From Guillardia theta CCMP2712 (Eukaryota > Protista > Cryptophyta), in assembly GCF_000315625.1 (NCBI RefSeq), contig NW_005434649.1, positions 668,810 through 732,809 of the forward strand: DNA of 64,000 nucleotides. Reading direction: 5' to 3'. A program made the position numbers and the translations under genes. Shown one piece after another: positions 320 through 43,766 of this stretch. Under the pieces are notes generated by a model. It worked only from the letters and a program-made list of their open reading frames with translations. It was not told the origin of the DNA and did no database searches. Numbering within the stretch: position 1 is the first letter of the stretch; each line of letters begins with the position of its first letter.

Positions 320-1381
320 ATGGCGCAGGCCCGCATCCTTCTCTTGTTTCTGTTCGCTTGCACTTCATGCGTAGAGCGCTGCAGCAGCTTTGCAACTGGG
401 AGGTTGCTGCCATGGGGTGAAGCTACCAGTCGGTTGTCATCTTCCGCGAGGAACCTGCCAAGAATGGAGGTGAAGGCGAAGCTGAGCCCGAGGATGTCTC
501 CAGCTAGCATCCCTCAGCTCAACGATCCCTTCGGTCCGTCGCGAGCTCTGAGAGATCTCGTGAAGATGACGAGACCTCAAAACATCCCAGCTGAGCTCGG
601 GCTGAGTCTCGCAGGCAGCCTCTTCGCCTCCCGGTCTCTCGCGTGCCTCGCTGACCCGCTGGTCTGGCTCGTCGCTCTCTTCAGCGCGTCCGTGGGCGTC
701 GGCTCCATGCTCATCAACGACTACTTCGACTATCGCTCAGGTGCGGACGCCTACAAGAGCAACCCGATGGCAGAGGGGACCGTACATCCAGAGCAAGCTC
801 TTCTCGCAGCATCCTCATGGTATCTCATGAGCTTCTTCTTCGCCTGCATCCTCCTCGAGTCATTCCAGCTCAGAGCGCTGGTGAGCGTCTCGCTGCTCCT
901 CACCTTCCTCTACACGCCGTTGTTGAAGGGGGTGCTCTTCCTCAAGAACTTGGTCGTCGCTTTTGTCATCGCCCAGGCGATCGTTCTGGGTGGTCTTGCT
1001 GTTGGAGACGTGAGGATGCAGAGCACCTTGCTCCCCTCCCTCTACATGTTCTGCCTCATCCTATGGCAGGAAGTCCTCATGGACATCCGCGACGTGCGGG
1101 GAGACGCGGAGGCTGGCATCAGAACGATCCCCGTCGTCCTCGGCTGCAAGTTTGCGGCTCTCCTTGCGCTCCTCTCTGCTGGGCTGGCTGCATTGCTTCC
1201 GCTCTTGGCGTCCGGTTCGACGGTGGCACGTCTTGCTCTGCCTCTGGTGCAGCTTCCTCTGCTGCATTCGACCTGGCGGCTGGTGGTGGCGGAGAAGGTG
1301 AAGGCGGAGGAGATCGCGCGAGCCCTCGGCCTGTGCGAGCGCACGGGCGCCCTCGCCATCCTCCTCCTCGCTGCTCCTTGA
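320..1381 (+). CDS. UbiA-family prenyltransferase (DGGGP-synthase/chlorophyll-synthase-like), intronless, probably plastid-targeted
   Basis: Motifs TRPQN, NDYFD...D and DIRDVRGD..AGIRTIPVVLG, plus many TM helices. The first in-frame ATG is at 320 and gives a signal peptide ending CSS-F followed by an S/R-rich transit-like segment. Confidence 0.85.
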   Translation: MAQARILLLFLFACTSCVERCSSFATGRLLPWGEATSRLSSSARNLPRMEVKAKLSPRMSPASIPQLNDPFGPSRALRDLVKMTRPQNIPAELGLSLAGSLFASRSLACLADPLVWLVALFSASVGVGSMLINDYFDYRSGADAYKSNPMAEGTVHPEQALLAASSWYLMSFFFACILLESFQLRALVSVSLLLTFLYTPLLKGVLFLKNLVVAFVIAQAIVLGGLAVGDVRMQSTLLPSLYMFCLILWQEVLMDIRDVRGDAEAGIRTIPVVLGCKFAALLALLSAGLAALLPLLASGSTVARLALPLVQLPLLHSTWRLVVAEKVKAEEIARALGLCERTGALAILLLAAP

Positions 1382-1679
1382 TGATGCCGCGAGCCTGCAT
1401 ACCCCATGCGAAGAAACCTGCTTTTAGGGATAGACCCAGGGGGAGGGGGTTAAAATAAACTAAAATGTAGGGGTAGTCCATAAGGCGCATTTCGTAATGC
1501 GACCTTTGTCCTTGCCGCTTGTTGTGCTACTGATCCATTGCTGCGCCTCCTCCTCCTCCTCGCTCTCTCCTCCTCTTCCTCCTCCTTCCACTTCTGGATC
1601 CTCCTCCTCCTCCTCCTCCTCAACATTATTTCTCCAATCCTGCTTCTCCCTGCTTCCGATTTCTCGTATCTCATCGCGA

Positions 1680-2716
1680 TGTGGCTTTGGCAGACCTCCC
1701 TCCTTTCAGCCCCGTCACTTCAGTCGCACGCTTTCATCGAGCATGGCGGGTTGTGAAGCAGCTGACGACTCGCAAACTCCAAGTCACAGCCGCATCCTGT
1801 TGGCCCCAGCAGCTCCTCGCGTGCATGCGCTTGAAGCTAAAGGAGGAACACCCTGGAGGTTCAACAGCTCTTGGCACCTCTTGCATCGCCAGCAGCGATT
1901 GTCGTCCTGCTGCGAGGTCTGGACCAAGGAGGAGAACACGCGGGTCTTCAAGTCCTTCCTCTCCCACAGCACCGCCGGGACCAGTCAGGTGGGGGTGAAG
2001 TTGAGGTGGAAGAGATCCCCTTTGCTGGATCTGGCGTCGGTTGCCAGGTCTGGGAGTCCTCGGTGGCTTGCGCGCTCCTCCTCGCCGCCATGCCTGCGGG
2101 CTGGCTATCGGAAGCTGGTTCTCTCCTCGAGCTTGGCTCGGGGGTGGGGTTAGGAGGAGGAGCAGCGGCTGAGCTGAGAGACCACCTCGGGTTGGATCAG
2201 ATACTGCTGTCGGACTGTCAGAGCAGCCTCGTTGAGCTGTTGAGGAGGCGGCGAGGTGAATCGGAGGGAGTGGTAGAGTTGGACTGGAACAAGGAGGAGG
2301 AGGTCAAGGCTGCGAGCAGCATGGCAGAGGGAGTGATGGCCTGCGATTGCGTTTATTACCATCCTGACATGCTCGCCTTGCTTCGAGCTGCTGCTCCCGG
2401 TGGCCTCCTCCAGCCCAAGCTGGGACTCTTTCTTGCCCCTCAGCATCGCTCGTGCTTCCAAGAGTTCCGGCGACACCTGCGGAAGAAGGCGGAGGAGGAG
2501 GGGCAGCACTGGTGCTCCTTCGAGGTGAAGCTGGAGGGGAGGCACGACTTCCTTCCTCGCCCCAGCGAGACCATCCTGGGCAGCTTGTCGGGCAGCCTCG
2601 ACCGTGAGAACAGAACGTCGATGACGCGCGTGTCCGGCTTCATGTTCTCCTCCTCCTTCAAGGTCATCCACGAGCTCAAGACAAGGCTGACGGAGGGAGA
2701 TGCTCGCAATGTCTGA
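1680..2716 (+). CDS. Class I SAM-dependent protein methyltransferase (Methyltransf_16/METTL21-like); 5' exons uncertain
   Basis: GCQVWESS, LLELGSGVGLGG (motif I), LSD, LDW and ACDCVY motifs in ORF 1871..2716. Confidence 0.75.
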
Positions 2717-2727
2717 GCCTCATCTGC

Positions 2728-5310
2728 TCAACAAGTCGAAGGCGCTTGAGGTCGACAGCGGAGGAAGCGACTCGTGCGAGGGCGATGAGACCTGCGAGGG
2801 GTGAGCAGTCCTTCTCTTCCTCCCCGTCTTACTGTCGCAGACTCGACGTGCTTCAAGAGCTCGTCCAGTCGCTCCTTCCAATCAACGAACGACGTCGCAG
2901 CTGACGGTACATGAGACAAGTGGAGAAGCCGAGGAGAGGCAGAGGAGGCGTTACCTGCTCCTGCTCTTGTCAGCGCTTCCTCTGCCCTGGTCTTGCTGCT
3001 TGCTTCCCCCTCATGCTCGCGTAGAGGAGGATTGAAGTCCCGCGATGCTGGCGGAGAGAGCTCGACGGTTAAAGGAGGAGGGAGAGAAAGGCTGGCGCGA
3101 GCTCGAGGCTCTTCCTGTTGGAGGGTGTTGGGGTTGGTAAAGGCTGAGGAAGAGGAGGAGAGGCTTGTTCGAGGGTGCGAGGTGGGAGGAGGCGGGACGG
3201 GTGGAGGAAAGGAGAGGTAAGGAGGCTCGACATTGGCGAGGAAGGAAGCATGAGCTGTGTGCAGGCTCTTCAAGATGCTCGCGGGAGCGTCAGGGTGATG
3301 GGGGTCGAGAGAGATCTGCGAACACTCAAAGAAGAAAATCGAAGAGAGAGTGGATGGAGAAGGTAGCGAGAGAGGGGAGGGACCTCTGCTGAAGAGGTTG
3401 CAACTTTACCTCGCAGTCTTGACAGGCAGCAGAGAGTCTCGTCAGCATTGTCTTTACCTGCCGCTCCAGTCTCGTAAAGTTGTCCTCCATCCTCCGCGCT
3501 CCCTCCTGTGCAATCGCCCTGTACGGGGTCAGCGAGTGAGGAGAGACGGAGCCCTTCCCCTCCTCGAGCTACTTTACCTTCCCTTCCCCTCCTCGAGCTA
3601 CTTTACCTTCCCTTCCTCTCCTCGAGCTACTTTACCTTCCCTTCCCCTCCTCGAGCTAGTTTACCTTTCGTGTCGTTGCAGCTGGAGCTCTCGGGTCAGG
3701 GTTCGCAGCTCAGCCTCCTTCTCTTCCACCAGGGTCTGCCGCGGCCTCTCACTTCCTCCTCCTCCCCGCCTCTCGCCTGCCTCAAGCGTGCGAACTCGCG
3801 AGCCGAAGGCAATCTCGCCGGCGGTGACGGCAGCAGAGGAGCGTTGCTGGAAGAGAAGCTCGCGAGCATGCTGGGGAAGGCAGTGAGAAGAGAGAGCGAG
3901 GCAAGCAGACGAGGATGAGGAAAGAAGAGTGGGAGGGTGAAGGCGAACAGTTGGCACCCGCTCATTTCTTGTTAGATTCGCTTCCGTCACTCCGAGATCT
4001 CTGCGCAGGTCGAGCACCATCTGACCCTGATTGAGAAAGGAAGGGGAAGAACAAGCGAGGAGAAGTACAAGACAGAGAGGAGGAGGAGAAGTACAAGACA
4101 GAGAGGAGGAGGAGAAGTACAAGACGGGAAGGAGGAGAAGGAGCACAAGACAAGAGGAGGATTAGGCTCAACCTCCTCTGCGGACTTAGTTTGCTGCTTG
4201 TATTTCTCCAGCTCCTCCAGGAGCGCCTGAAGGGACTGAGTCTCCTCCTCCCTCCCCCTCCCCCTCACCTCGCGCTCTTCCACCATATCATGGCACATGT
4301 CCAGCAAGTTGAAGAATTCTGCTGACCCTCGCGCCAGTCGCACCTGAAACAACTTCACCGACACTCACGTTGCCTCCTTCCTCCCTCCTCTCGTCGCTAC
4401 CGTGAAGTAGTGCCACAAGTCCTCGTCCTCCTCCAAGTCGCTGCTGTTCTCCGAGTCCGAGTCCTCCCACTCCTCAGCTTTCTGCGTGTCTTCATTCGTC
4501 TCTTCCTCTCTCCTGGAGCTTTCTGCTCCCCTCCCTCACTCCTCTCTTGCTCACGCTTCCCTCACGCTTCCAGCTCCTGCTCTTCCCCACGCTCCTGCTC
4601 CTTCTTTTCAGCCTCTTTCGTGGTCTTCCTACTCCCTCTTATCCTCTTTTCTCATCCTCCTCCACTCCACACCCTGACGAGTCTACTACGACCACTGGCT
4701 ACTCCAACTTTCTCCAAACCAGCTCAAATCCTTTCTTTCCTCCTCCTCCTCCTCCTCCTCCTCCTCCTCCTCACTTTCTTCTTCGACGCCTGGCTCAGGG
4801 ATCTCCGCATGACCAGAGACACGCCGGAGCCAGGGGGGCCGAGCAGGAGCATGTTGACCTGAGGAAGCAGCAGAGGCGCCACGTCCACCCCCTCCACCCG
4901 CACCAGCTCGTCTCCGATGCTGTCATCCATGTCAAAACCCCAGCAAATCCCCAGCTACCCCAATCTCTCACCAGATCGATGGATTCTTCGCACGATCTGC
5001 TGCAGTTCCAGGGAGAATTTCTTGAACGCGAAAACGCTTGACAGGAGGAGGCTGAACTCGGACAACAGCTTCCTCCTCCTCCTCCTCCTCCTCCTCCTCC
5101 TCCTCCTCCTTGTTTCTTTTGTCCTTCCCCAGCTTGTCTTTCACACCAAGGTTGAGGTTGACAAAACCTGCTGAGGGTCAGCTGGAAATTGAGGGACGTT
5201 TGGCTCACGCGGAGGGGAGGAAGTTTCGAGGTGAGAGAGGATCAGCCCGACGCCGTTGACAGTGAAATGCGAAGCATCCGCCCGCACGTGAAACATCATT
5301 TCCTGTCTAC
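2728..5310 (-). CDS. Multi-exon PDZ-domain plus coiled-coil protein
   Basis: Hand-spliced minus-strand exons read NGVGLIL...FRVQEILPGTAADRAK...IGDELVRVEGVDVAPLLLPQVNMLLLGPPGSGVSLVMRR (PDZ, ~4790-5260). E/K/R-rich coiled-coil exons follow (ALLEELEKYKQQ, LVEEKEAELRTLTRELQ). Gene limits are approximate. Confidence 0.55.
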
Positions 5311-33149: not shown

Positions 33150-35097
33150 AGGGGGCAGGAGGGGGCAGGAGACCCTTGGAAGCAGGAGGAGGATCCCTGA
33201 GCCTATCAGCCTCCGGTATCGCAGCATCGAACCATCCCTTGGTCTCGGCCTTCGACGTGAAAGAAAAGTCAGAGAGAGGAGAGGGGAGGAAGTCGAGGAG
33301 AGACCTCTAGCTGTTCGAGGCGAGTGACGATGTTTGCCTTCTGATTCAACTTCTTAATCTCGTCCAGGCTCAACTGCAGCAGGTTCAGCGAGCGACGAGG
33401 AAGCGTCTCCTCCTACCACTTGCTTGCTGTCCTCAATCGCTTTGAGCTCTCGCAGCTGAAACTCAGCGGGTCAACCTCTGCTCCTGCCCCTCTACCATCC
33501 AACCTGCTTGCGGAGAGTGAGGATCTCCCGATCTTCCTTCCGCCTCCTCACAGTTGGAGTTGCGTCCTTCAGTCCTGCAACATGTCAAGGAGCCAGGAGA
33601 AGGACGAAGGGAGTGACGGGGAGGAGGAGGAGGAGGATAGTGTTCGGCAAACCTTGAATTTTAGCCTGCAGTGCAGCCATCGCTGCTTCCAGCTTGTCCG
33701 TCTTCTTTCTGCCGCTGCCGGTCAGCTGGGGGAGCAGCAGGGCCTGGAGTGGACCCGCTGGACTTCTGGGAGGCGATGGAGGAGGAAAGCTGCTGCTCCT
33801 TCTCCTTCAGCTCGGAGATCTGCAAGCTCAACCTGTCATCCCCCCTCTAGCTCAGCAGTGGACCACCATTAGGTCAAGCTCGGCCCTGTAAGCGGCTCAG
33901 AGAACCCTTCCCTCTTCCCTCTCTCTCATCTCCACCTTGTCAAGTGCTGCCCGGTCATCATACCCTCCAGCTGCTTCTCCAGCTCTGAAACCTGCAGCGG
34001 GGGGTCAAGAAAGAAGGACCGAACGGCCTCCTCACCTTCCCCGGCACGTCTTGCGCAGTGTTGTACAACTCGTCCTCGCTCGCTGTCAGCTGCCCAGCAG
34101 CGTAAGAGGAGAGGGCAGGAGAGGAGAGGGCAGGAGAGGAGAGGAGAGGAGAGGAGAGGGGAGGGGAGGGCAGGAGAGGAGAGGAGAGGAGAGGAGAGGA
34201 TCGTCGGCGACCTGCTCCATCTTCGACATCTTCTCTTCAAAACCTGCAAAGATTCACGTCACTGAGCCTCCAGTTCCCCTGCCCCCCAGCCTCTTCAAGT
34301 CACTTACCTGCGATCTTCGCCGCCATCTCCTTCATCGCCTTGAGCAGCGCGCGACGCTGCGAGAAGGAAGGACACTGCTTGGCCACCAGCTTCACGAAGG
34401 TCTCCATGGACACGATGCTGCTCCCTCTCAGAGCTGTATCACCCTTCCCAGCTCGTCACCTGCAGAGATGCTCTGGCGGAAGCTCCTCCAGCTAGTTGGG
34501 CACCGTGAGGTCCTCACAAGCAGCAAGGGAGGAGGTACCTTCATGCCCCCGATCTTGATGTCCGCCTCCTCCTCCGCCTCCGCAGGGGCGGCAGAAGCCG
34601 AGATGTCGATCTTGGGAAACACGTGAATGAACTTCAAGTCCTTGTCTGTGTCGTGCTGATACTTGAAGCTGCCCGCACACTCCATGATCTGTCTACAGGA
34701 GTGACCACCTTGTCCCCGTCTCCCTCAACCCTCTCACCGCACTCGCCCCACGGTCCTCTTCGAAGCCGATGGCTCTCAACGCATCGCGGCAGAACTTGGG
34801 CATGTCATCGCCATACTTCTGACGGACCTGTACAGCACTCGCATGTCAGAGCTCGCACTTGTGCTCAGGGCTCAAAGTTCCTTCTTGCCGCCTCCTACGG
34901 TAAAGCGAAAGCCGATCATCTTAGGTGCCGGGATCGCCTCAGAGAAGGCTGCGGTGAAGAGCTCGGAGATCTGCGACTGAATGTCTCCGTCAGTTGCATG
35001 CGGGCACACGACAAGGACCGACCTGCCCGAAACCAGCGAGATCAATGTCCTCGTGATCGGTCGCCGATCGAATCTGCTTAGCGAGAGATGAAGCCAT
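33150..35097 (-). CDS. Multi-exon uncharacterised protein with coiled-coil C-terminus
   Basis: MASSLAKQIRSATDHEDIDLAGF, FRFTVGGGKK|VRQKYGDD and GSFKYQHDTDKDLKFIHVFP. 3' end is approximate. Confidence 0.6.
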
Positions 35098-35614
35098 ATT
35101 CCGATGCTCCTCTGCGACAACAGTCAGACAGCATCTCACCTCCCTCCCTGCCTCTCCCTCCCTTCCTTTCCCTCCCCGCCTCGCCCCCCCCCCTCCGTTT
35201 TCTCCTTTTCTTCCTCCTTCTCTTCCTCCCTGCCTCTCCCTGCCTCTTCCCCCCCGCCTCTCCTTCTCTCCCTCCCTCCTTCGCTCTCCCTCTCTCCCTC
35301 TCTCCCTCCCTCCCTCCTCCCCACCTCTCTCTCTCCTTCTCTCCCTCCCTCCTTCGCTCTCCCTCCCTCCCTCCCTCTTCTCTTCTCTGTTCTCTCCATT
35401 CCGATCTCGTGTTCGCATCTCATAAAGATCTTGCAACTCATCCCCCTCATATTCTCGTACCCCTCATCCCCACTCTGTCCCCACTCATCCCTGCACTCAT
35501 CTGTGCACTCCTGCTCCTGGATCCCGCTCATGCTCTGCCTCACGCTACTGCCCGTCACTGCCGCAGCTCATGGCAGAGCAGCGAAGAGAGAGAAGAGGGA
35601 GGGAGGGAGGGAGG

Positions 35615-35716
<102 letters not shown>

Positions 35717-35919
35717 AGTGGCGATGGATGGAGGGATTGAGGGATAGCCAGATAGACTCAGTGTGTGTGGGGAGCAAAGAACGAAGAGGATTATGATAGA
35801 GAGAGAAGCGTAGGAGGAAAAGCGGTGAAAGCAGGTGGCGGAGTGTGGAGGATTCCAGGGAAAGAGCTGAGGAGGCGCGGCCTGATGGAGATTTTAAAGG
35901 ACGGCGACACGAGGTGAAG

Positions 35920-39261
<3,342 letters not shown>

Positions 39262-39599
39262 AGAAGTAGGAGNNNNNNNNNNNNNNNNNNNNNNNNNNNN
39301 NNNNNNNNNNNNNNNNNNNNNNNNNNNNNNNNNNNNNNNNNNNNNNNNNNNNNNNNNNNNNNNNNNNNNNNNNNNNNNNNNNNNNNNNNNNNNNNNNNNN
39401 NNNNNNNNNNNNNNNNNNNNNNNNNNNNNNAGAAAAAAGGTCTCTTACCTCTCTCCCCCCCCCCCCGCCCCCCCCCCCCTTCCACTCCTCCTCCCCCTCC
39501 TCCTCCTCCTCCTCCTCCTCCCCTTCCACTCCTCCTCCCCCTCCTTCTCCTTGACACCCATCCCTCTCCTTGTGCTCGTGATATTCTCTATTATCTTCA

Positions 39600-39972
39600 T
39601 CCATCTACTCTCCCCCTTCTCTCACCTTGGCATGCAGAAACAGTCTCCGCAATGTCTTTCCCTCCCGCTGCTCCTTCACTCAACGTCAGCCTCCCTCTCC
39701 CACGCAGCGCATGTCACCTCCTCCTCCTCCTCCTCCTCCTTGTTCCTCCCCTTTTGTCGCAGCCACCATGCGCGAATCCTGATTCACCAGTCAGCGCAAG
39801 ATGAGGGGCCAGAGGAGGAGAGGAAAGAGTGCAGGAGGAGAGGATATGTACGAGGAGAGGAAGACGAGGAGGAGCGAAAAGGGAGAAGGGAGGAAAAGGT
39901 GGAAGAGCAAAGTTGAAGAGAGTATGAGGACGGAAAAGGGACGCTGCTGCTGGGGATGATGATGATGATGAA

Positions 39973-40006
<34 letters not shown>

Positions 40007-40013
40007 GTGATGG

Positions 40014-40049
<36 letters not shown>

Positions 40050-42418
40050 GGAGGAGGAGTTGACATGTTTGCGGCGATGACTCGAAGGTCTTCTCGCGCT
40101 TTCTCTCTCTCCATGATGGCGATGGCGGAGAACTCAGCAGGAGTGAAGAGGATCAGGTTGCCGAGGGCTGCTGTAGTCAGCGACGCGCAGAGGATGCCGA
40201 AGGTGGCAGCCAACAAGGCGATGAGACGCCCCAGGATGGTCGTAGGGACCTGCTCCCCTGCTCCAACGTCAGGCAAAGCTCGTGGAGCAGTAGGGGAGTG
40301 AAGCAGGGAGGAGGGGGAGGCATGGAGAAAGAGGAAGAAAGGAAACGGTTGGACGTCCGAGAGGAGGGAGGAGGGAGGAGAGAGGAGAGAGGGAACAGGA
40401 GGGAACATTGGGAGGGAGAGGAGGAAGGAAGAGGAGGAGGCATGGAGGATGGAGGGGGAGGAGGAGGGATAACCATAGCCGACGGTGGTCATAGTGACGA
40501 AGATAAACCAGAAGCTGTTGGTCAGCCAGACGTCGTTCTGCTTGCCGAACTTGCTTCCTGCCACCTCCCATTCCGTCGCCTGCGGCTGCTGGCAGGCGGC
40601 GCTGGTGGCGGAGGGGAGGAGGCAGAAGGAGAACTCGACAGAGCGGTACAGGTAGCCGAAGATGATCATCATGACGAACCAGGCGATGAGGATGACGTTG
40701 AAGCCGGTCCAGCGGTTGAGCAGGCGCTTGAGGCAGAAGAGAGCGTCAAAGGAGACGCGCGTGTGGTGGGAGATCACGCTCCTCATCGGGATCTCCCGCA
40801 GGACGAGGAACATCACCAGCGACCACGTCAAGTACATCCTCAGCGCGTTCCACACGCACCCGACCGTCTCTCCCGCATACACCACCACGTTCCCCATCCA
40901 CACCAGCTCCAGTTCCACCGCCACGTGAGGAGGTGCATGCGGGAGACACACGAGCAGCTCAACCCACAGTCCCTTCCTCCTCGCGACGGAGCGGAAGGGG
41001 ACGCGGAGGTCAAGCTTCTTCCCCAGCTGCACGTGACGGTCGATGCGCTTGGCTCGGATGAGGAAGACGTAGGAGGAGTAGAGGAAGATGCAGCATGCGA
41101 CGGTCGCGATCGAGTTCAGCCACTTGAGCGCGTTGATGGCAGGGGCGCGAGGAGACGTTCCTCCCAGCACCAGCTCGTTCGTCAGCACCGCAGCGAGCAG
41201 CCCGACAAGGCTGGTGACGCACGAGAGGATCCTGAGCAGGAGCTGCCTGGTCTCAACCTCCTTCCTGCAGCTGGTCCAGTCCCTAATCTTGTTGGGATCG
41301 GGCTTGAAGGAGAGCACTCGGAGGAACGAGGCCCTCGCGCCCTCTGTCTTCGTCTCCATCATCGTTATCGAGTGCTCGAGGTTCGCGTCAAAGTCTGATC
41401 GCTTCTGCTCTGCGAGGACTTTCAGCTGCGACGAGAGGATGTTGTTGAACGTCTTTCTCCTCTGCTCTCTCGCTTGCTTCCTCTTCAGCTTCATGGACCC
41501 TCCCATGCCTTCCTCCTGCCCCAAGCTCGACCTCCTCTTCCTCTGCTCGTTCCGTTGCCGCGCCCCCTGCACGAACTGGCTGAGGTTGCTGTTGCGCCGG
41601 AAGAGTTTGCGGGGATGGGACAAATGTTCGACCTCAGGGGTGGTCTTCTTGAGAATATCCAGCAGAGCCCCGTGAATCTTCTTGGAAGACGAGGAGATCT
41701 GATCTACCTTCACCGAGTCAGCCAGACAGTCGTCGAGGTCCACCTCCGTCCTCTTCTTCTGCTTCATGAACGCCGCGCGCAAGCTCGCTGCTCGCTGCTC
41801 CGCCCTCCCCCGGTCTCCCCTCAGCCCCTTCCACTTAATCTGCACAAGTCGAGCCGCATGCTCCCTGGCCTTCAGTCGCGCGATCTCTCTGTCTGCCACA
41901 AGGTTCGCCGCTATCTCCTCCTCCGTCCACTGCAGCGCGTTCTGAAACGCCGCCGTCATGAGTGAAACCAGGATGAGACCGGTCCCCGCCTGCGCTCAGA
42001 TCAGCGAGGAGGTTCAGGATGAGGAGGGTCAAGGACGTCAGTGAGTGAGGAAGGAGGAGCGAGAGAAAGGCGGAGGAGAGGAAGAGGAGGGAACGGCAGC
42101 AGGAGGGAGCAAGTGGACAAGTTATCCAACATTACCGTGAGGATCGCGACGAATCGACTCATGTGGGTTGTACAGAGAATATCACCTGCAGTTTGGATCA
42201 GAAGAGAAGGATGGTGGAGGTGGAGGTGGAGGTGGAGGTGGAGGTGGAGGTGGAGGTGGAGGAGGAGGAGGAGGAGGAGGAGGAGGAGGAGGAGGATGAG
42301 GAGGAGGAGGATGAGGAGGAGGAGGAGGAGGAGGAGGAGGAGGAGGATAGGGCGAATGATAGAAGATGAAGGAGAGGAGGAGAAAGAATACGAGCAGCAA
42401 GTAGGCCCTGCAGGAGGT

Positions 42419-42453
<35 letters not shown>

Positions 42454-43766
42454 TACAGCGAGAGCCAAGGAGGAGGGGAGAGAGAGGAGCAGGTAGCAGG
42501 GGCATGTCCGGAGATCAGAAGGCAATCGAGGGAGCAAGACGAGGTGGGGGGGAGAGGGGGAGGACAACAAGGGCGAGGAGTGAAGGCTTACCGTAACCTA
42601 TCGTCGTGCTCGTCACAAACATCGCCCACACCGCGTTCTGATACCACAGATCGTTCTTCTTCTCAAACTCTGCAGGAACAAACTCAGCAAGGAGCAGGAG
42701 AAACTCGTGCTTTCTCCTTGCCTCTGAAGTTGATCTCCCAGGTCGATGCCTCTGGCCTGTTGCAGTCAAGATGCTGCCAGCCAGGCAGCTGGCAAGCAGT
42801 CGCCTCGAAGGAGCGGAACCAGAAGGCGAAGAGAAAGACGCTGATGAGCCACAAGATGGTGATGAAGAGGAGGGAGAACTTGCTGCGGATGACTTTCTTG
42901 ACGACGAAGGAGGAGCCCATGGGGATATTGGTGAAAGAGGAGATGGTGTGTCTCTTGGGGAGGCTCTGCAGCACCTGGTCCTTGAGCACGGGCCACAGCA
43001 GGTACAACCGGAAGGTGTTGATAACTGCAAGGATCGTCTCTCCTCGGTAGAGGATGAAGTTGTTCCAATTCCACACTCCGAGCTCGAACGTGGTCATGGG
43101 AGGGAGGTGAAGTCCGCACACCACCAGCTCTGCCCAGAAGGAGGAAGAAAGAGCTACCGAGCTGAGAGAGAAGTCGGTATCCAGTGCTTTCAGGTGGCGC
43201 AGGTGCAGGTTAACTCGCTGCAGCAGCCCGTTGAGCAAGTAGAAGTAGACGAGGAAACTCAGAGCCGCGCACGTCGCGATCGTGTTGGCAGCCTTCAGCA
43301 GGTTGCAAGCAGCAGCATGCGCGTCTACCCCGTACAGGATCAGCTCGTCGCAGGCCACGGCAAAACCGCATCCCATCAGCCCGCACAGTGCCGCTCCTCT
43401 TCGCACGTTTCGCATGGTCTTGTCCACTTGCGCCCTGTTGCGGCGCCAGTTGCTGGTGATGTGGAGGGGAGGGCGATGGGAAAGGAGGGTGACGCTCGTC
43501 TCAGAGGCGAGTCTTCCATCACGCACGCTGACGTTGCTTGCAGAGATAGAGCCCTGCTCTTGTATTTCCATCGGATGTAGCTTCGCAGGCTTCCTCCGGG
43601 CCGGCTCCTGCTCCTGCTCTTGCGAGTGCTGCTGCTGCTGCTGCTGCTGCTGCTGCAAGTGCTGCTGCTCTTGCTGCTGCTGTTCGTTCTCTTCCTCCTG
43701 TCGTTGTTGCGGTACAGGCCCCTCCTGCTCTGCCTCATCGTTGGAGATCCTATTGGAGTAGCCCAT
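39600..43766 (-). CDS. SK/KCNN-like K+ channel with two tandem channel repeats, each with pore and IQ-like helix
   Basis: Repeat 1: FWAELVVCGLHLPP, FRLYL, TSTTIGYG|D, HAARLVQIKWK. Repeat 2: LWVELLVCLPHAPP, LRMYL, TMTTVGYG|E, IAANM|IRAWW. 3' end is approximate. Confidence 0.85.

What the first reader, a model, noticed from the sequence alone, without database searches (positions are those of the whole stretch)
39600..43766. Two complete SK-like K+ channel subunits fused in one polypeptide
Seen: two homologous repeats, each with TM helices, the SK-type ELxVCxxHxPP segment, an S4-like RLYL/RMYL, a TTxGYG pore and an IQ-like helix. The end of repeat 1 (S6 plus HAARLVQIKWK), a basic linker and most of repeat 2 lie in one uninterrupted exon (~41989-40473), so the fusion is not produced by my splicing. 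Established: KCNN/SK channels are tetramers of single-repeat subunits, and two-repeat 6TM architecture is typical of TPC channels, not K+-selective ones. Inference: this is a dimeric, calmodulin-regulated two-repeat K+ channel with a fixed A-B-A-B pore, possibly an undescribed class.
Basis: partly seen in the sequence, partly recalled or inferred. Interest (0 to 1): 0.75.

Follow-up and report, generated by a model that had tools for sequence, protein, structure and literature searches.

The report
Two-repeat SK-like potassium channel gene
This gene of the alga Guillardia theta encodes two complete SK-type potassium-channel units joined in one protein; other cryptophyte algae share the design, nobody has tested it at the bench, and it is a new variation on tandem channels already noted in other protists.

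Summary
A six-exon minus-strand gene (43766..39676) encodes about 994 aa with two homologous 6TM units. Each unit has an SK-type S3 motif, a one-arginine S4, a canonical GYG filter and a post-S6 HA helix. One stop-free exon (41989..40474) carries the S6 end of repeat 1, HA, a roughly 190-aa linker and repeat 2 up to its filter. The gene is GUITHDRAFT_106691 (XP_005834682.1, "hypothetical protein") of Guillardia theta.

The fusion is not an artefact:
- Four paralogous loci in the same genome have the same tandem layout.
- A G. theta transcript-derived protein maps exactly onto 15 spliced exons of one paralog, across the junction.
- Transcriptome ORFs of Hemiselmis and Teleaulax carry both repeats, and a Hanusia transcript runs from the linker into repeat 2.

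Sequence and fold searches put SK2/SK4 (KCNN) clearly first.

Dimer assembly and Ca2+/calmodulin gating are inferred. Pfam finds no CaMBD, and the complex test with the alga's own calmodulin gave only weak support.

Two-repeat 6TM K+ channels (Kv-like and CNBD) were reported in protists in 2020, so this is a new SK-type variant, not a new class. This scan had already noted paralogs on other DNA of this genome. I obtained no RNA reads for this gene.

The parts
42722..43766 (-). Exon 1. ATG at 43766, a Q-rich N-terminus, then repeat 1 from S1 to S5 and the turret. Includes ELVVCGLHLPP at 43130..43098 and S4 FRLYLLW at 43013..42993.
   Evidence: ORF and translation. Identical to XP_005834682.1 up to residue 315. 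The 3' boundary at 42722 is my inference.
42670..42721 (-). Intron 1 as I infer it: 52 nt, GC-AG, donor gcaagg. The database model instead removes 49 nt further upstream with GT-AG and shifts the frame.
   Evidence: My version restores the family motif WFRxxExTAC..C..A..W and gives a gapless alignment with repeat 2. The annotated version has pLDDT below 50 at 337-352. Introns of 42-51 nt, two apparently with gcaag donors (boundaries to within a few nt), are seen in the C61 paralog. No RNA evidence for this gene.
42592..42669 (-). Exon 2: pore helix and selectivity filter of repeat 1 (TTIGY-G). It ends in a phase-1 donor G|gtaagc.
   Evidence: Ion_trans_2 hit.
42136..42185 (-). Exon 3: end of filter 1 (G-D) and the first half of S6 of repeat 1.
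   Evidence: present in XP_005834682.1.
40474..41989 (-). Exon 4, the fusion exon: second half of S6 of repeat 1, HA helix 1 (41923..41816), a linker of about 190 aa, then repeat 2 from S1 to the filter TTVGY-G.
   Evidence: 505 stop-free codons. 74% identical over 210 aa to a Hanusia phi transcript product, which then continues colinearly into repeat 2.
40258..40473 (-). Intron 4 (GT-AG, 216 nt, CT-rich), in phase 1 at the same GY|G position as intron 2.
40065..40257 (-). Exon 5: end of filter 2, S6 of repeat 2 and the start of HA helix 2.
   Evidence: Aligns with the SK4 pore-S6-HA region.
39676..39778 (-). Exon 6: rest of HA helix 2 (IRAWWLRQKGR), an acidic tail, and the stop TGA at 39678..39676.
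   Evidence: The tail is short compared with relatives, and an assembly gap lies at 39273-39430.

Best explanation
This is one real nuclear gene of Guillardia theta (GUITHDRAFT_106691). It encodes a protein of about 994 aa made of two SK/IK-type 6TM channel units in tandem, laid out as unit A, HA helix, helical linker, unit B, HA helix. It belongs to a small family in which every named member is a cryptophyte.

Shown here:
- the architecture;
- its conservation in paralogs and in other species;
- its closest likeness to KCNN channels;
- two canonical K+ filters.

Inferred:
- Two chains assemble as a dimer, so that four pore units alternate A-B-A-B around one K+-selective pore.
- The channel is not voltage-gated, because each S4 has a single arginine.
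- It is opened by Ca2+ through calmodulin or a calmodulin-like protein. That protein would sit on the HA helices and on the helices that follow HA of unit A, and act on the two-helix S4-S5 linkers, as in SK4.
- The likely role is to convert Ca2+ signals into hyperpolarisation or repolarisation.
For: One gene:
- Exon 4 is stop-free across the junction.
- The database protein XP_005834682.1 (996 aa) equals my exon model except for residues 316-350.

Conserved layout:
- Four further loci in this genome (C27, C19, C61, C423) are all tandem. No single-repeat SK-like locus was found.
- The G. theta transcript-derived protein A0A7S4KUL3 maps exactly to 15 exons of the C61 locus, from pore A through the linker to the end of unit B.
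- Long relatives have two full units: Hemiselmis tepida, H. rufescens, Teleaulax amphioxeia, and contigs of 4.5-4.6 kb filled by a single ORF.
- In the supported clades, repeats group by position, for example 97/92 for first repeats of this subfamily.

SK likeness:
- By sequence, the best solved relatives are KCa3.1 (1e-11) and SK2 (3e-9, S1 to HA), ahead of Kv.
- The AF2 model has pLDDT 78.7 and pTM 0.71. The 20 best Foldseek matches are all SK2/SK4, with E from 4e-9 to 6e-5 and target TM-score 0.57-0.77. Kv follows only at E of 2e-3 or worse and TM about 0.2.
- The model shows two short helices between S4 and S5 in both units, and HA helices at 416-449 and 938-971.

Calmodulin:
- Both HA helices align with the SK4 HA helix.
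- Complex test of residues 408-525 with the genome's own calmodulin exon: verdict weak support, score 0.46, best of 3 controls 0.00. The mark was reached by 51 of 78 solved complexes and 2 of 108 mismatched pairs. Scores of 0.60 or under were seen in only 5 of those 78 and in all 4 mismatches that passed (of 180). The runs agree in at least 56% of contacts and the partner's pLDDT is at least 72.
Against: - No RNA was laid on this gene.
- Pfam finds no CaMBD. SK_channel passes only as a whole-protein sum; repeat 1 alone scores 20.9 against 31.8 bits, and repeat 2 is not reported.
- Unit B has only about 21 residues after HA, so it has no HB-like helix.
- The complex score is in the weak range. 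SK-calmodulin complexes are solved, so the pass may reflect memory of those structures and not binding by this protein.
- Dimer stoichiometry, selectivity and gating are untested.
- The deep A/B split in the tree is weak (60/86), and one subfamily sits the other way round.
Confidence: 0.6

Rival explanations
1. The tandem protein is real, but it is not gated by Ca2+/calmodulin. It could be a leak channel, be gated by another EF-hand protein (the genome has many EF-hand loci), by phosphorylation of the basic linker, or by another ligand.
For: Pfam finds no CaMBD at E up to 10. Unit B has no HB-like segment. The complex test gives only weak support. Past HA, the linker has no detectable likeness to SK. 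EF-hand_7 gave 146 matches at or above its cut-off in the genome, which counts matches, not genes.
Against: HA helices are conserved in both units across the family, with a basic, W-rich end like the SK HA helix. A two-helix S4-S5 linker is predicted; in SK4 this is where the calmodulin N-lobe docks (my recollection of the SK4 structure paper, not read here). The complex score of 0.46 stands against controls of 0.00.
Confidence: 0.3
2. The fusion is an artefact: two neighbouring single-repeat genes are joined by a mis-assembly or by an open reading frame that is not translated as one protein.
For: No RNA reads were laid on this gene. The database model has one doubtful splice. An assembly gap lies just 3' of the gene.
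Against: Exon 4 has 505 stop-free codons across the junction. The linker is 74% identical to the Hanusia transcript product, which runs on into repeat 2. All five loci in the genome have the same layout. One paralog's spliced mRNA product spans the junction. Relatives have complete two-unit ORFs on single contigs.
Confidence: 0.03
3. The gene is a decaying or silent copy, or a non-conducting partner of its paralogs.
For: No transcript-derived protein of this gene is in the collections, although one of a paralog is. The C-terminal tail is short and low-complexity, and it lies next to an assembly gap.
Against: All six exons are in frame with no stop. Both filters and all family motifs are intact. 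Public runs hold 0.5-0.7 of the stretch's sampled words, though the kind of those runs is unknown.
Confidence: 0.05

Closest known systems
KCNN channels: SK1-3 (KCa2.x) and IK/SK4 (KCa3.1) of animals
   Same: These are the best sequence and fold matches. Shared features: the ELxxCxxHxPP motif in S3, a charge-poor S4 (RxYL), a two-helix S4-S5 linker, a GYG filter, and an HA helix directly after S6 that aligns with the SK4 HA helix. The model also predicts a beta-hairpin in the S3-S4 loop.
   Different: KCNN subunits have one 6TM unit and form tetramers with four calmodulins. Here two units are fused. Pfam CaMBD is not detected. Only unit A is followed by further helices, and unit B ends about 21 residues after HA. 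Identity to KCNN is only 17-20% in the structural alignments.
[quoted passage not shown] 2020, PMC7576140)
   Same: Two 6TM units with GYG-type filters lie in one ORF. First and second repeats group by position in trees. They are known only from sequence, with no functional data.
   Different: Those belong to the Kv-like and CNBD clusters and come from SAR lineages. That paper explicitly left BK and IK/SK channels out. This family is SK/IK-like, and all its named members are cryptophytes.
Two-pore channels (TPC1-3)
   Same: They have two 6TM units per chain and are known to work as dimers.
   Different: TPC filters are not GYG, and TPCs conduct Na+/Ca2+ or are non-selective (general knowledge). 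The fold match is poor: TPC2 at E=1e-2 with TM 0.15-0.21.
K2P and TOK channels, and the four-repeat CNGK channel of sperm (general knowledge)
   Same: These are K+-selective channels built from concatenated pore units, so a pseudo-symmetric K+ pore has precedent.
   Different: K2P has 4TM/2P and TOK has 8TM/2P, with no S1-S4 domains in both units. CNGK has four 6TM-CNBD repeats. None is SK-like.

Membership tests
KCNN (SK/IK) channels | SK-type S1-S4 region (Pfam SK_channel, PF03530) | tested here: inconclusive
   The whole protein scores 35.4 bits against a cut-off of 31.8. Repeat 1 alone scores 20.9, and repeat 2 alone is not reported.
KCNN (SK/IK) channels | K+ selectivity filter T-x-G-Y-G | tested here: met
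   TTIGYGD and TTVGYGE. Ion_trans_2 matches twice.
KCNN (SK/IK) channels | Closest relatives by sequence and by fold are SK/IK channels | tested here: met
   KCa3.1 at 1e-11 and SK2 at 3e-9, ahead of Kv. The top 20 Foldseek matches are all SK2/SK4, followed by a wide gap.
KCNN (SK/IK) channels | Calmodulin-binding domain after S6 (HA and HB helices; Pfam CaMBD, PF02888) | tested here: inconclusive
   Pfam gives no CaMBD hit at E up to 10. HA of both units aligns with the SK4 HA helix. Helices 453-474 and 484-509 follow HA of unit A in the model. The complex test gave weak support: 0.46 against a best control of 0.00.
KCNN (SK/IK) channels | Single 6TM unit per chain, assembling as a tetramer | tested here: not met
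   There are two units per chain. Assembly itself cannot be tested with these tools.
Two-repeat tandem 6TM K+ channels of protists (PMC7576140) | Two 6TM-P units in one ORF, with repeats grouping by position in trees | tested here: met
   Position-wise clades are supported within subfamilies, but the deepest split is weak.
Two-repeat tandem 6TM K+ channels of protists (PMC7576140) | Belongs to the Kv-like or CNBD cluster | tested here: not met
   SK/IK channels are the closest relatives, and Kv lies far behind. No CNBD is found by Pfam.
TPC | Non-GYG filter and TPC-like fold | tested here: not met
   Both filters are GYG. TPC2 matches at E=1e-2 with TM 0.15-0.21.

The most novel reading that the evidence does not exclude
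Cryptophytes may make SK-type channels only as obligate asymmetric tandems. Only unit A would carry a full HA-plus-following-helices module for calmodulin, and unit B would have specialised (a bare HA here, and a non-GYG filter in some paralogs). Two sensors instead of four would then gate a fixed A-B-A-B pore. That would be a gating stoichiometry and pore asymmetry not known for any Ca2+-activated K+ channel.
Probability: 0.25. Interest if true: 0.7.

Novelty: new variant of a known kind. Interest (0 to 1): 0.5.

Why it matters
SK/IK channels are the textbook case of calmodulin-gated tetramers. A natural concatemer fixes the order of two diverged units around the pore. Experimenters otherwise have to engineer that order to study subunit stoichiometry, asymmetric filters and how many Ca2+ sensors are needed to open the gate.

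The finding also extends the recently noticed habit of protists to fuse 6TM K+ channel units from the Kv-like and CNBD groups to the SK group, and to a further lineage, the cryptophytes. It gives a candidate for the K+ conductance that follows Ca2+ and light signals in an alga best known for its channelrhodopsins.

It is not a new class, and the protein has been in GenBank since the genome paper as a hypothetical protein.

Tried and rejected
The word shares of the public runs (0.71-0.73 in X4/X5) are close to the exon fraction (about 0.72). I do not count this, because the kind of those runs is unknown and the low-complexity introns could be lost from DNA contigs too.
- One search used the wrong frame and was corrected.
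- The word search with exon 4 gave one hit only (Hanusia). Low-complexity words and the length filter limit it, so I used the exhaustive search.
[quoted passage not shown] For example, P0184 sits next to unit B of P0152. I therefore read them as fragments, not as single-unit genes. I cannot exclude that some are single-unit.
- Search for further C-terminal exons in 35000-39800 using tails of relatives: nothing found.
- Pfam CaMBD: no hit.
- A clean A-versus-B bipartition of all repeats: not obtained. 0 of 200 bootstrap trees gave one change.
- Literature searches for an SK-type tandem or for cryptophyte K+ channels: nothing found. The library holds open-access papers and preprints only.
- Poly(A) tails on the mRNA-like contigs L033 and L034: none seen.
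Full report
**What is there.**
- The region holds one minus-strand gene. My exon model is E1 43766..42722, E2 42669..42592, E3 42185..42136, E4 41989..40474, E5 40257..40065 and E6 39778..39676. That is 2985 nt and 994 codons, with one stop at the end.
- The product has two homologous 6TM units. Unit A has S3 ELVVCGLHLPP, S4 FRLYLLW and filter TTIGYGD. Its S6 is followed by a helix ending HAARLVQIKWKGLRG.
- Unit B has ELLVCLPHAPP, LRMYLTW and TTVGYGE. Its S6 is followed by a helix ending IAANMIRAWWLRQKGR.
- Unit B matches unit A at E=1e-50 over about 325 residues. Both filters are split by a phase-1 intron at the same place, GY|G.
- E4 is 505 stop-free codons. It carries the end of S6 of unit A, its HA helix, a linker of about 190 aa, and unit B up to its filter.

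**Whose gene it is.**
- The exhaustive protein search returned a 996-aa protein that a cluster look-up names XP_005834682.1 / EKX47702.1 / L1JH95, "hypothetical protein GUITHDRAFT_106691", Guillardia theta CCMP2712. The assembly has 87 Mb in 669 contigs.
- That protein equals my model except at residues 316-350. There the database model removes 49 nt (GT-AG) and reads the end of S5 and the turret in another frame.
- A 52-nt GC-AG intron at 42721..42670 instead restores the family motif WFRxxExTAC..C..A..W and gives a gapless match to unit B. The AF2 model of the database protein has pLDDT below 50 exactly at 337-352.
- Introns of 42-51 nt are seen in a paralog whose exons are fixed by a transcript-derived protein, and two of them appear to have gcaag donors, with boundaries good to a few nt.
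- I did not search a joined spliced model. Exons were searched by reference, and whole-protein steps used the database record. The joined step is left out.

**Is the fusion real?** Five lines of evidence say yes.
1. The exon across the junction is stop-free.
2. A six-frame search of the same genome finds four more loci (C27, C19, C61, C423). All have unit, HA, linker, unit in the same order, and on C27 one 522-aa alignment runs through the junction. No single-unit SK-like locus was found.
3. The G. theta transcript-derived protein A0A7S4KUL3 (617 aa) maps without mismatch onto 15 exons of the C61 locus. It runs from the filter of unit A through S6, HA and the linker to the end of unit B. This alga therefore makes one spliced mRNA across the junction, at least for that paralog.
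4. A Hanusia phi transcript product is 74% identical over 210 aa of S6 end plus linker. After a frameshift in that record, it continues colinearly (58% identity in the shifted frame) over unit B.
5. All relatives of 880 aa or more have two complete units. They include Hemiselmis tepida, H. rufescens and Teleaulax amphioxeia (a complete 1329-aa ORF). They also include two contigs of 4.5-4.6 kb filled by a single ORF of 1430-1455 aa, and a metagenome contig where unit A, the linker and most of unit B lie in one ORF.

What is missing is RNA on this very gene. 

**Family size and range.**
- Only 195 of 1.84 billion representative proteins match at E of 1e-3 or better.
- Named members are Guillardia, Hanusia, Hemiselmis (two species), Teleaulax, Rhodomonas and Proteomonas. 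The three I looked up fall in two orders of Cryptophyceae; that the others are cryptophytes too is my own knowledge. The remaining members are unnamed environmental sequences.
- In a maximum-likelihood tree of single units, first repeats of this gene, of GUITHDRAFT_137762, of Teleaulax and of one mRNA-like contig form a clade (97/92). Their second repeats also group together (82/89). Other subfamilies pair by position as well.
- The deepest A/B split is weak (60/86), and one subfamily sits the other way round.
- The duplication is therefore older than these paralogs and genera. I do not claim a single origin for the whole family.

**What kind of channel.**
- By sequence, the best solved relatives are KCa3.1/SK4 (1e-11; pore, S6, HA) and SK2 (3e-9; S1 to HA), ahead of Kv and KcsA. 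Unit A's pore-S6-HA also aligns with SK4 through HA.
- AF2 with a 93-sequence alignment gives pLDDT 78.7 and pTM 0.71. The 20 best Foldseek matches are all SK2 or SK4 structures, with E from 4e-9 to 6e-5 and target TM-score 0.57-0.77. Kv4, Kv3 and KCNQ follow only at E of 2e-3 or worse with TM about 0.2, and TPC2 at 1e-2.
- The model shows, in both units, two short helices between S4 and S5, a hairpin in the S3-S4 loop, and a long HA helix (416-449 and 938-971).
- Pfam is weaker. Ion_trans_2 matches twice. SK_channel passes only as a whole-protein sum. CaMBD is absent.

**How it most likely works.**
- Shown: two canonical K+ filters, and one arginine per S4.
- Inferred: two chains form a dimer with four pore units alternating A-B-A-B around a K+-selective, voltage-independent pore.
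- Gating by Ca2+ through calmodulin is the best guess, because HA is conserved across the family in both units and aligns with the SK4 HA helix.
- After HA of unit A the model has helices 453-474 and 484-509, then a disordered stretch, helix 530-545, and a long helix 560-619 leading towards S1 of unit B. Unit B ends about 21 residues after HA.
- I found a calmodulin exon in the same genome (147 aa, L025:1495-1935, minus strand) and tested it against residues 408-525. The verdict was weak support: score 0.46, best of 3 controls 0.00.
- The mark was reached by 51 of 78 solved complexes and 2 of 108 mismatched pairs. Scores of 0.60 or under were seen in only 5 of those 78 and in all 4 mismatches that passed (of 180). 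The runs agree in at least 56% of contacts, and the partner's pLDDT is at least 72.
- Because SK-calmodulin complexes are solved, the pass may show likeness only. I put calmodulin gating at roughly even odds.

**Comparison with what is known.**
- Two-repeat tandem 6TM channels with GYG-type filters were reported from sequence in dinoflagellates, oomycetes and chlorarachniophytes, in the Kv-like and CNBD groups. The same paper states that BK and IK/SK were not considered (PMC7576140).
- I found no paper on an SK-type tandem or on cryptophyte K+ channels.
- This is therefore a new variant of a known kind, not a new class.
- The scan had already noted and followed up two paralogs on other DNA of this genome, with the same reading.

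**Caveats.**
- The C-terminus lies about 250 nt from an assembly gap (39273-39430) and is short compared with relatives, so it may be incomplete. No further exon was found.
- Assembly, selectivity and gating are all untested.

Noticed in passing
window 42670-42830 (minus strand): The GenBank model XP_005834682.1 looks mis-spliced at residues 316-350. Its 49-nt GT-AG intron removes the end of S5. A 52-nt GC-AG intron at 42721..42670 fits the family motifs and the other repeat better.
   Followed up: partly
window 38900-39430: A long (TC)n microsatellite and an assembly gap (N at 39273-39430) lie about 250 nt 3' of the stop codon. The protein's tail after the second HA helix is only about 21 aa, against 68-267 aa in relatives, so the C-terminus may be incomplete.
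   Followed up: partly
window 39960-40064 and 42200-42450: The introns are made of trinucleotide repeats that stay open in the coding frame: (CAT)n reading as poly-His in intron 5, and (CTC)n and (CCA)n in intron 2. Read-through ORFs therefore look longer than the exons.
   Followed up: no
L015 (G000:C61:459500-468500), nt 4000..1119, minus strand: The paralog has 15 exons that match transcript-derived A0A7S4KUL3 exactly. 12 of its 14 introns are 42-51 nt long, and two appear to use GC donors (gcaag).
   Followed up: yes
P0001 (Hanusia phi, EukProt): The record changes frame at the border between the linker and repeat 2. Its last 240 residues are an off-frame reading of repeat 2. This is either a transcript assembly error or a real frameshift.
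   Followed up: partly
L013 (G000:C27), protein P0167 = GUITHDRAFT_137762: The second unit of this paralog has TITPGAGNG in place of a GYG filter. Another relative (P0180) has TTVGFTT. So some family members have a non-canonical second pore loop.
   Followed up: no
L025:1495-1935 (minus strand; G000:C26) and L023 (G000:C32): L025 holds a calmodulin exon of 147 aa that lacks only the start codon, which presumably sits in a mini-exon. L023 holds a centrin gene. Both turned up while I was looking for a partner for the complex test.
   Followed up: partly
P0221 (JGI/IMG metagenome protein): This fragment of the channel family is named 'ABC-type proline/glycine betaine transport system permease subunit' by its source, which looks like a misnomer.
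   Followed up: no
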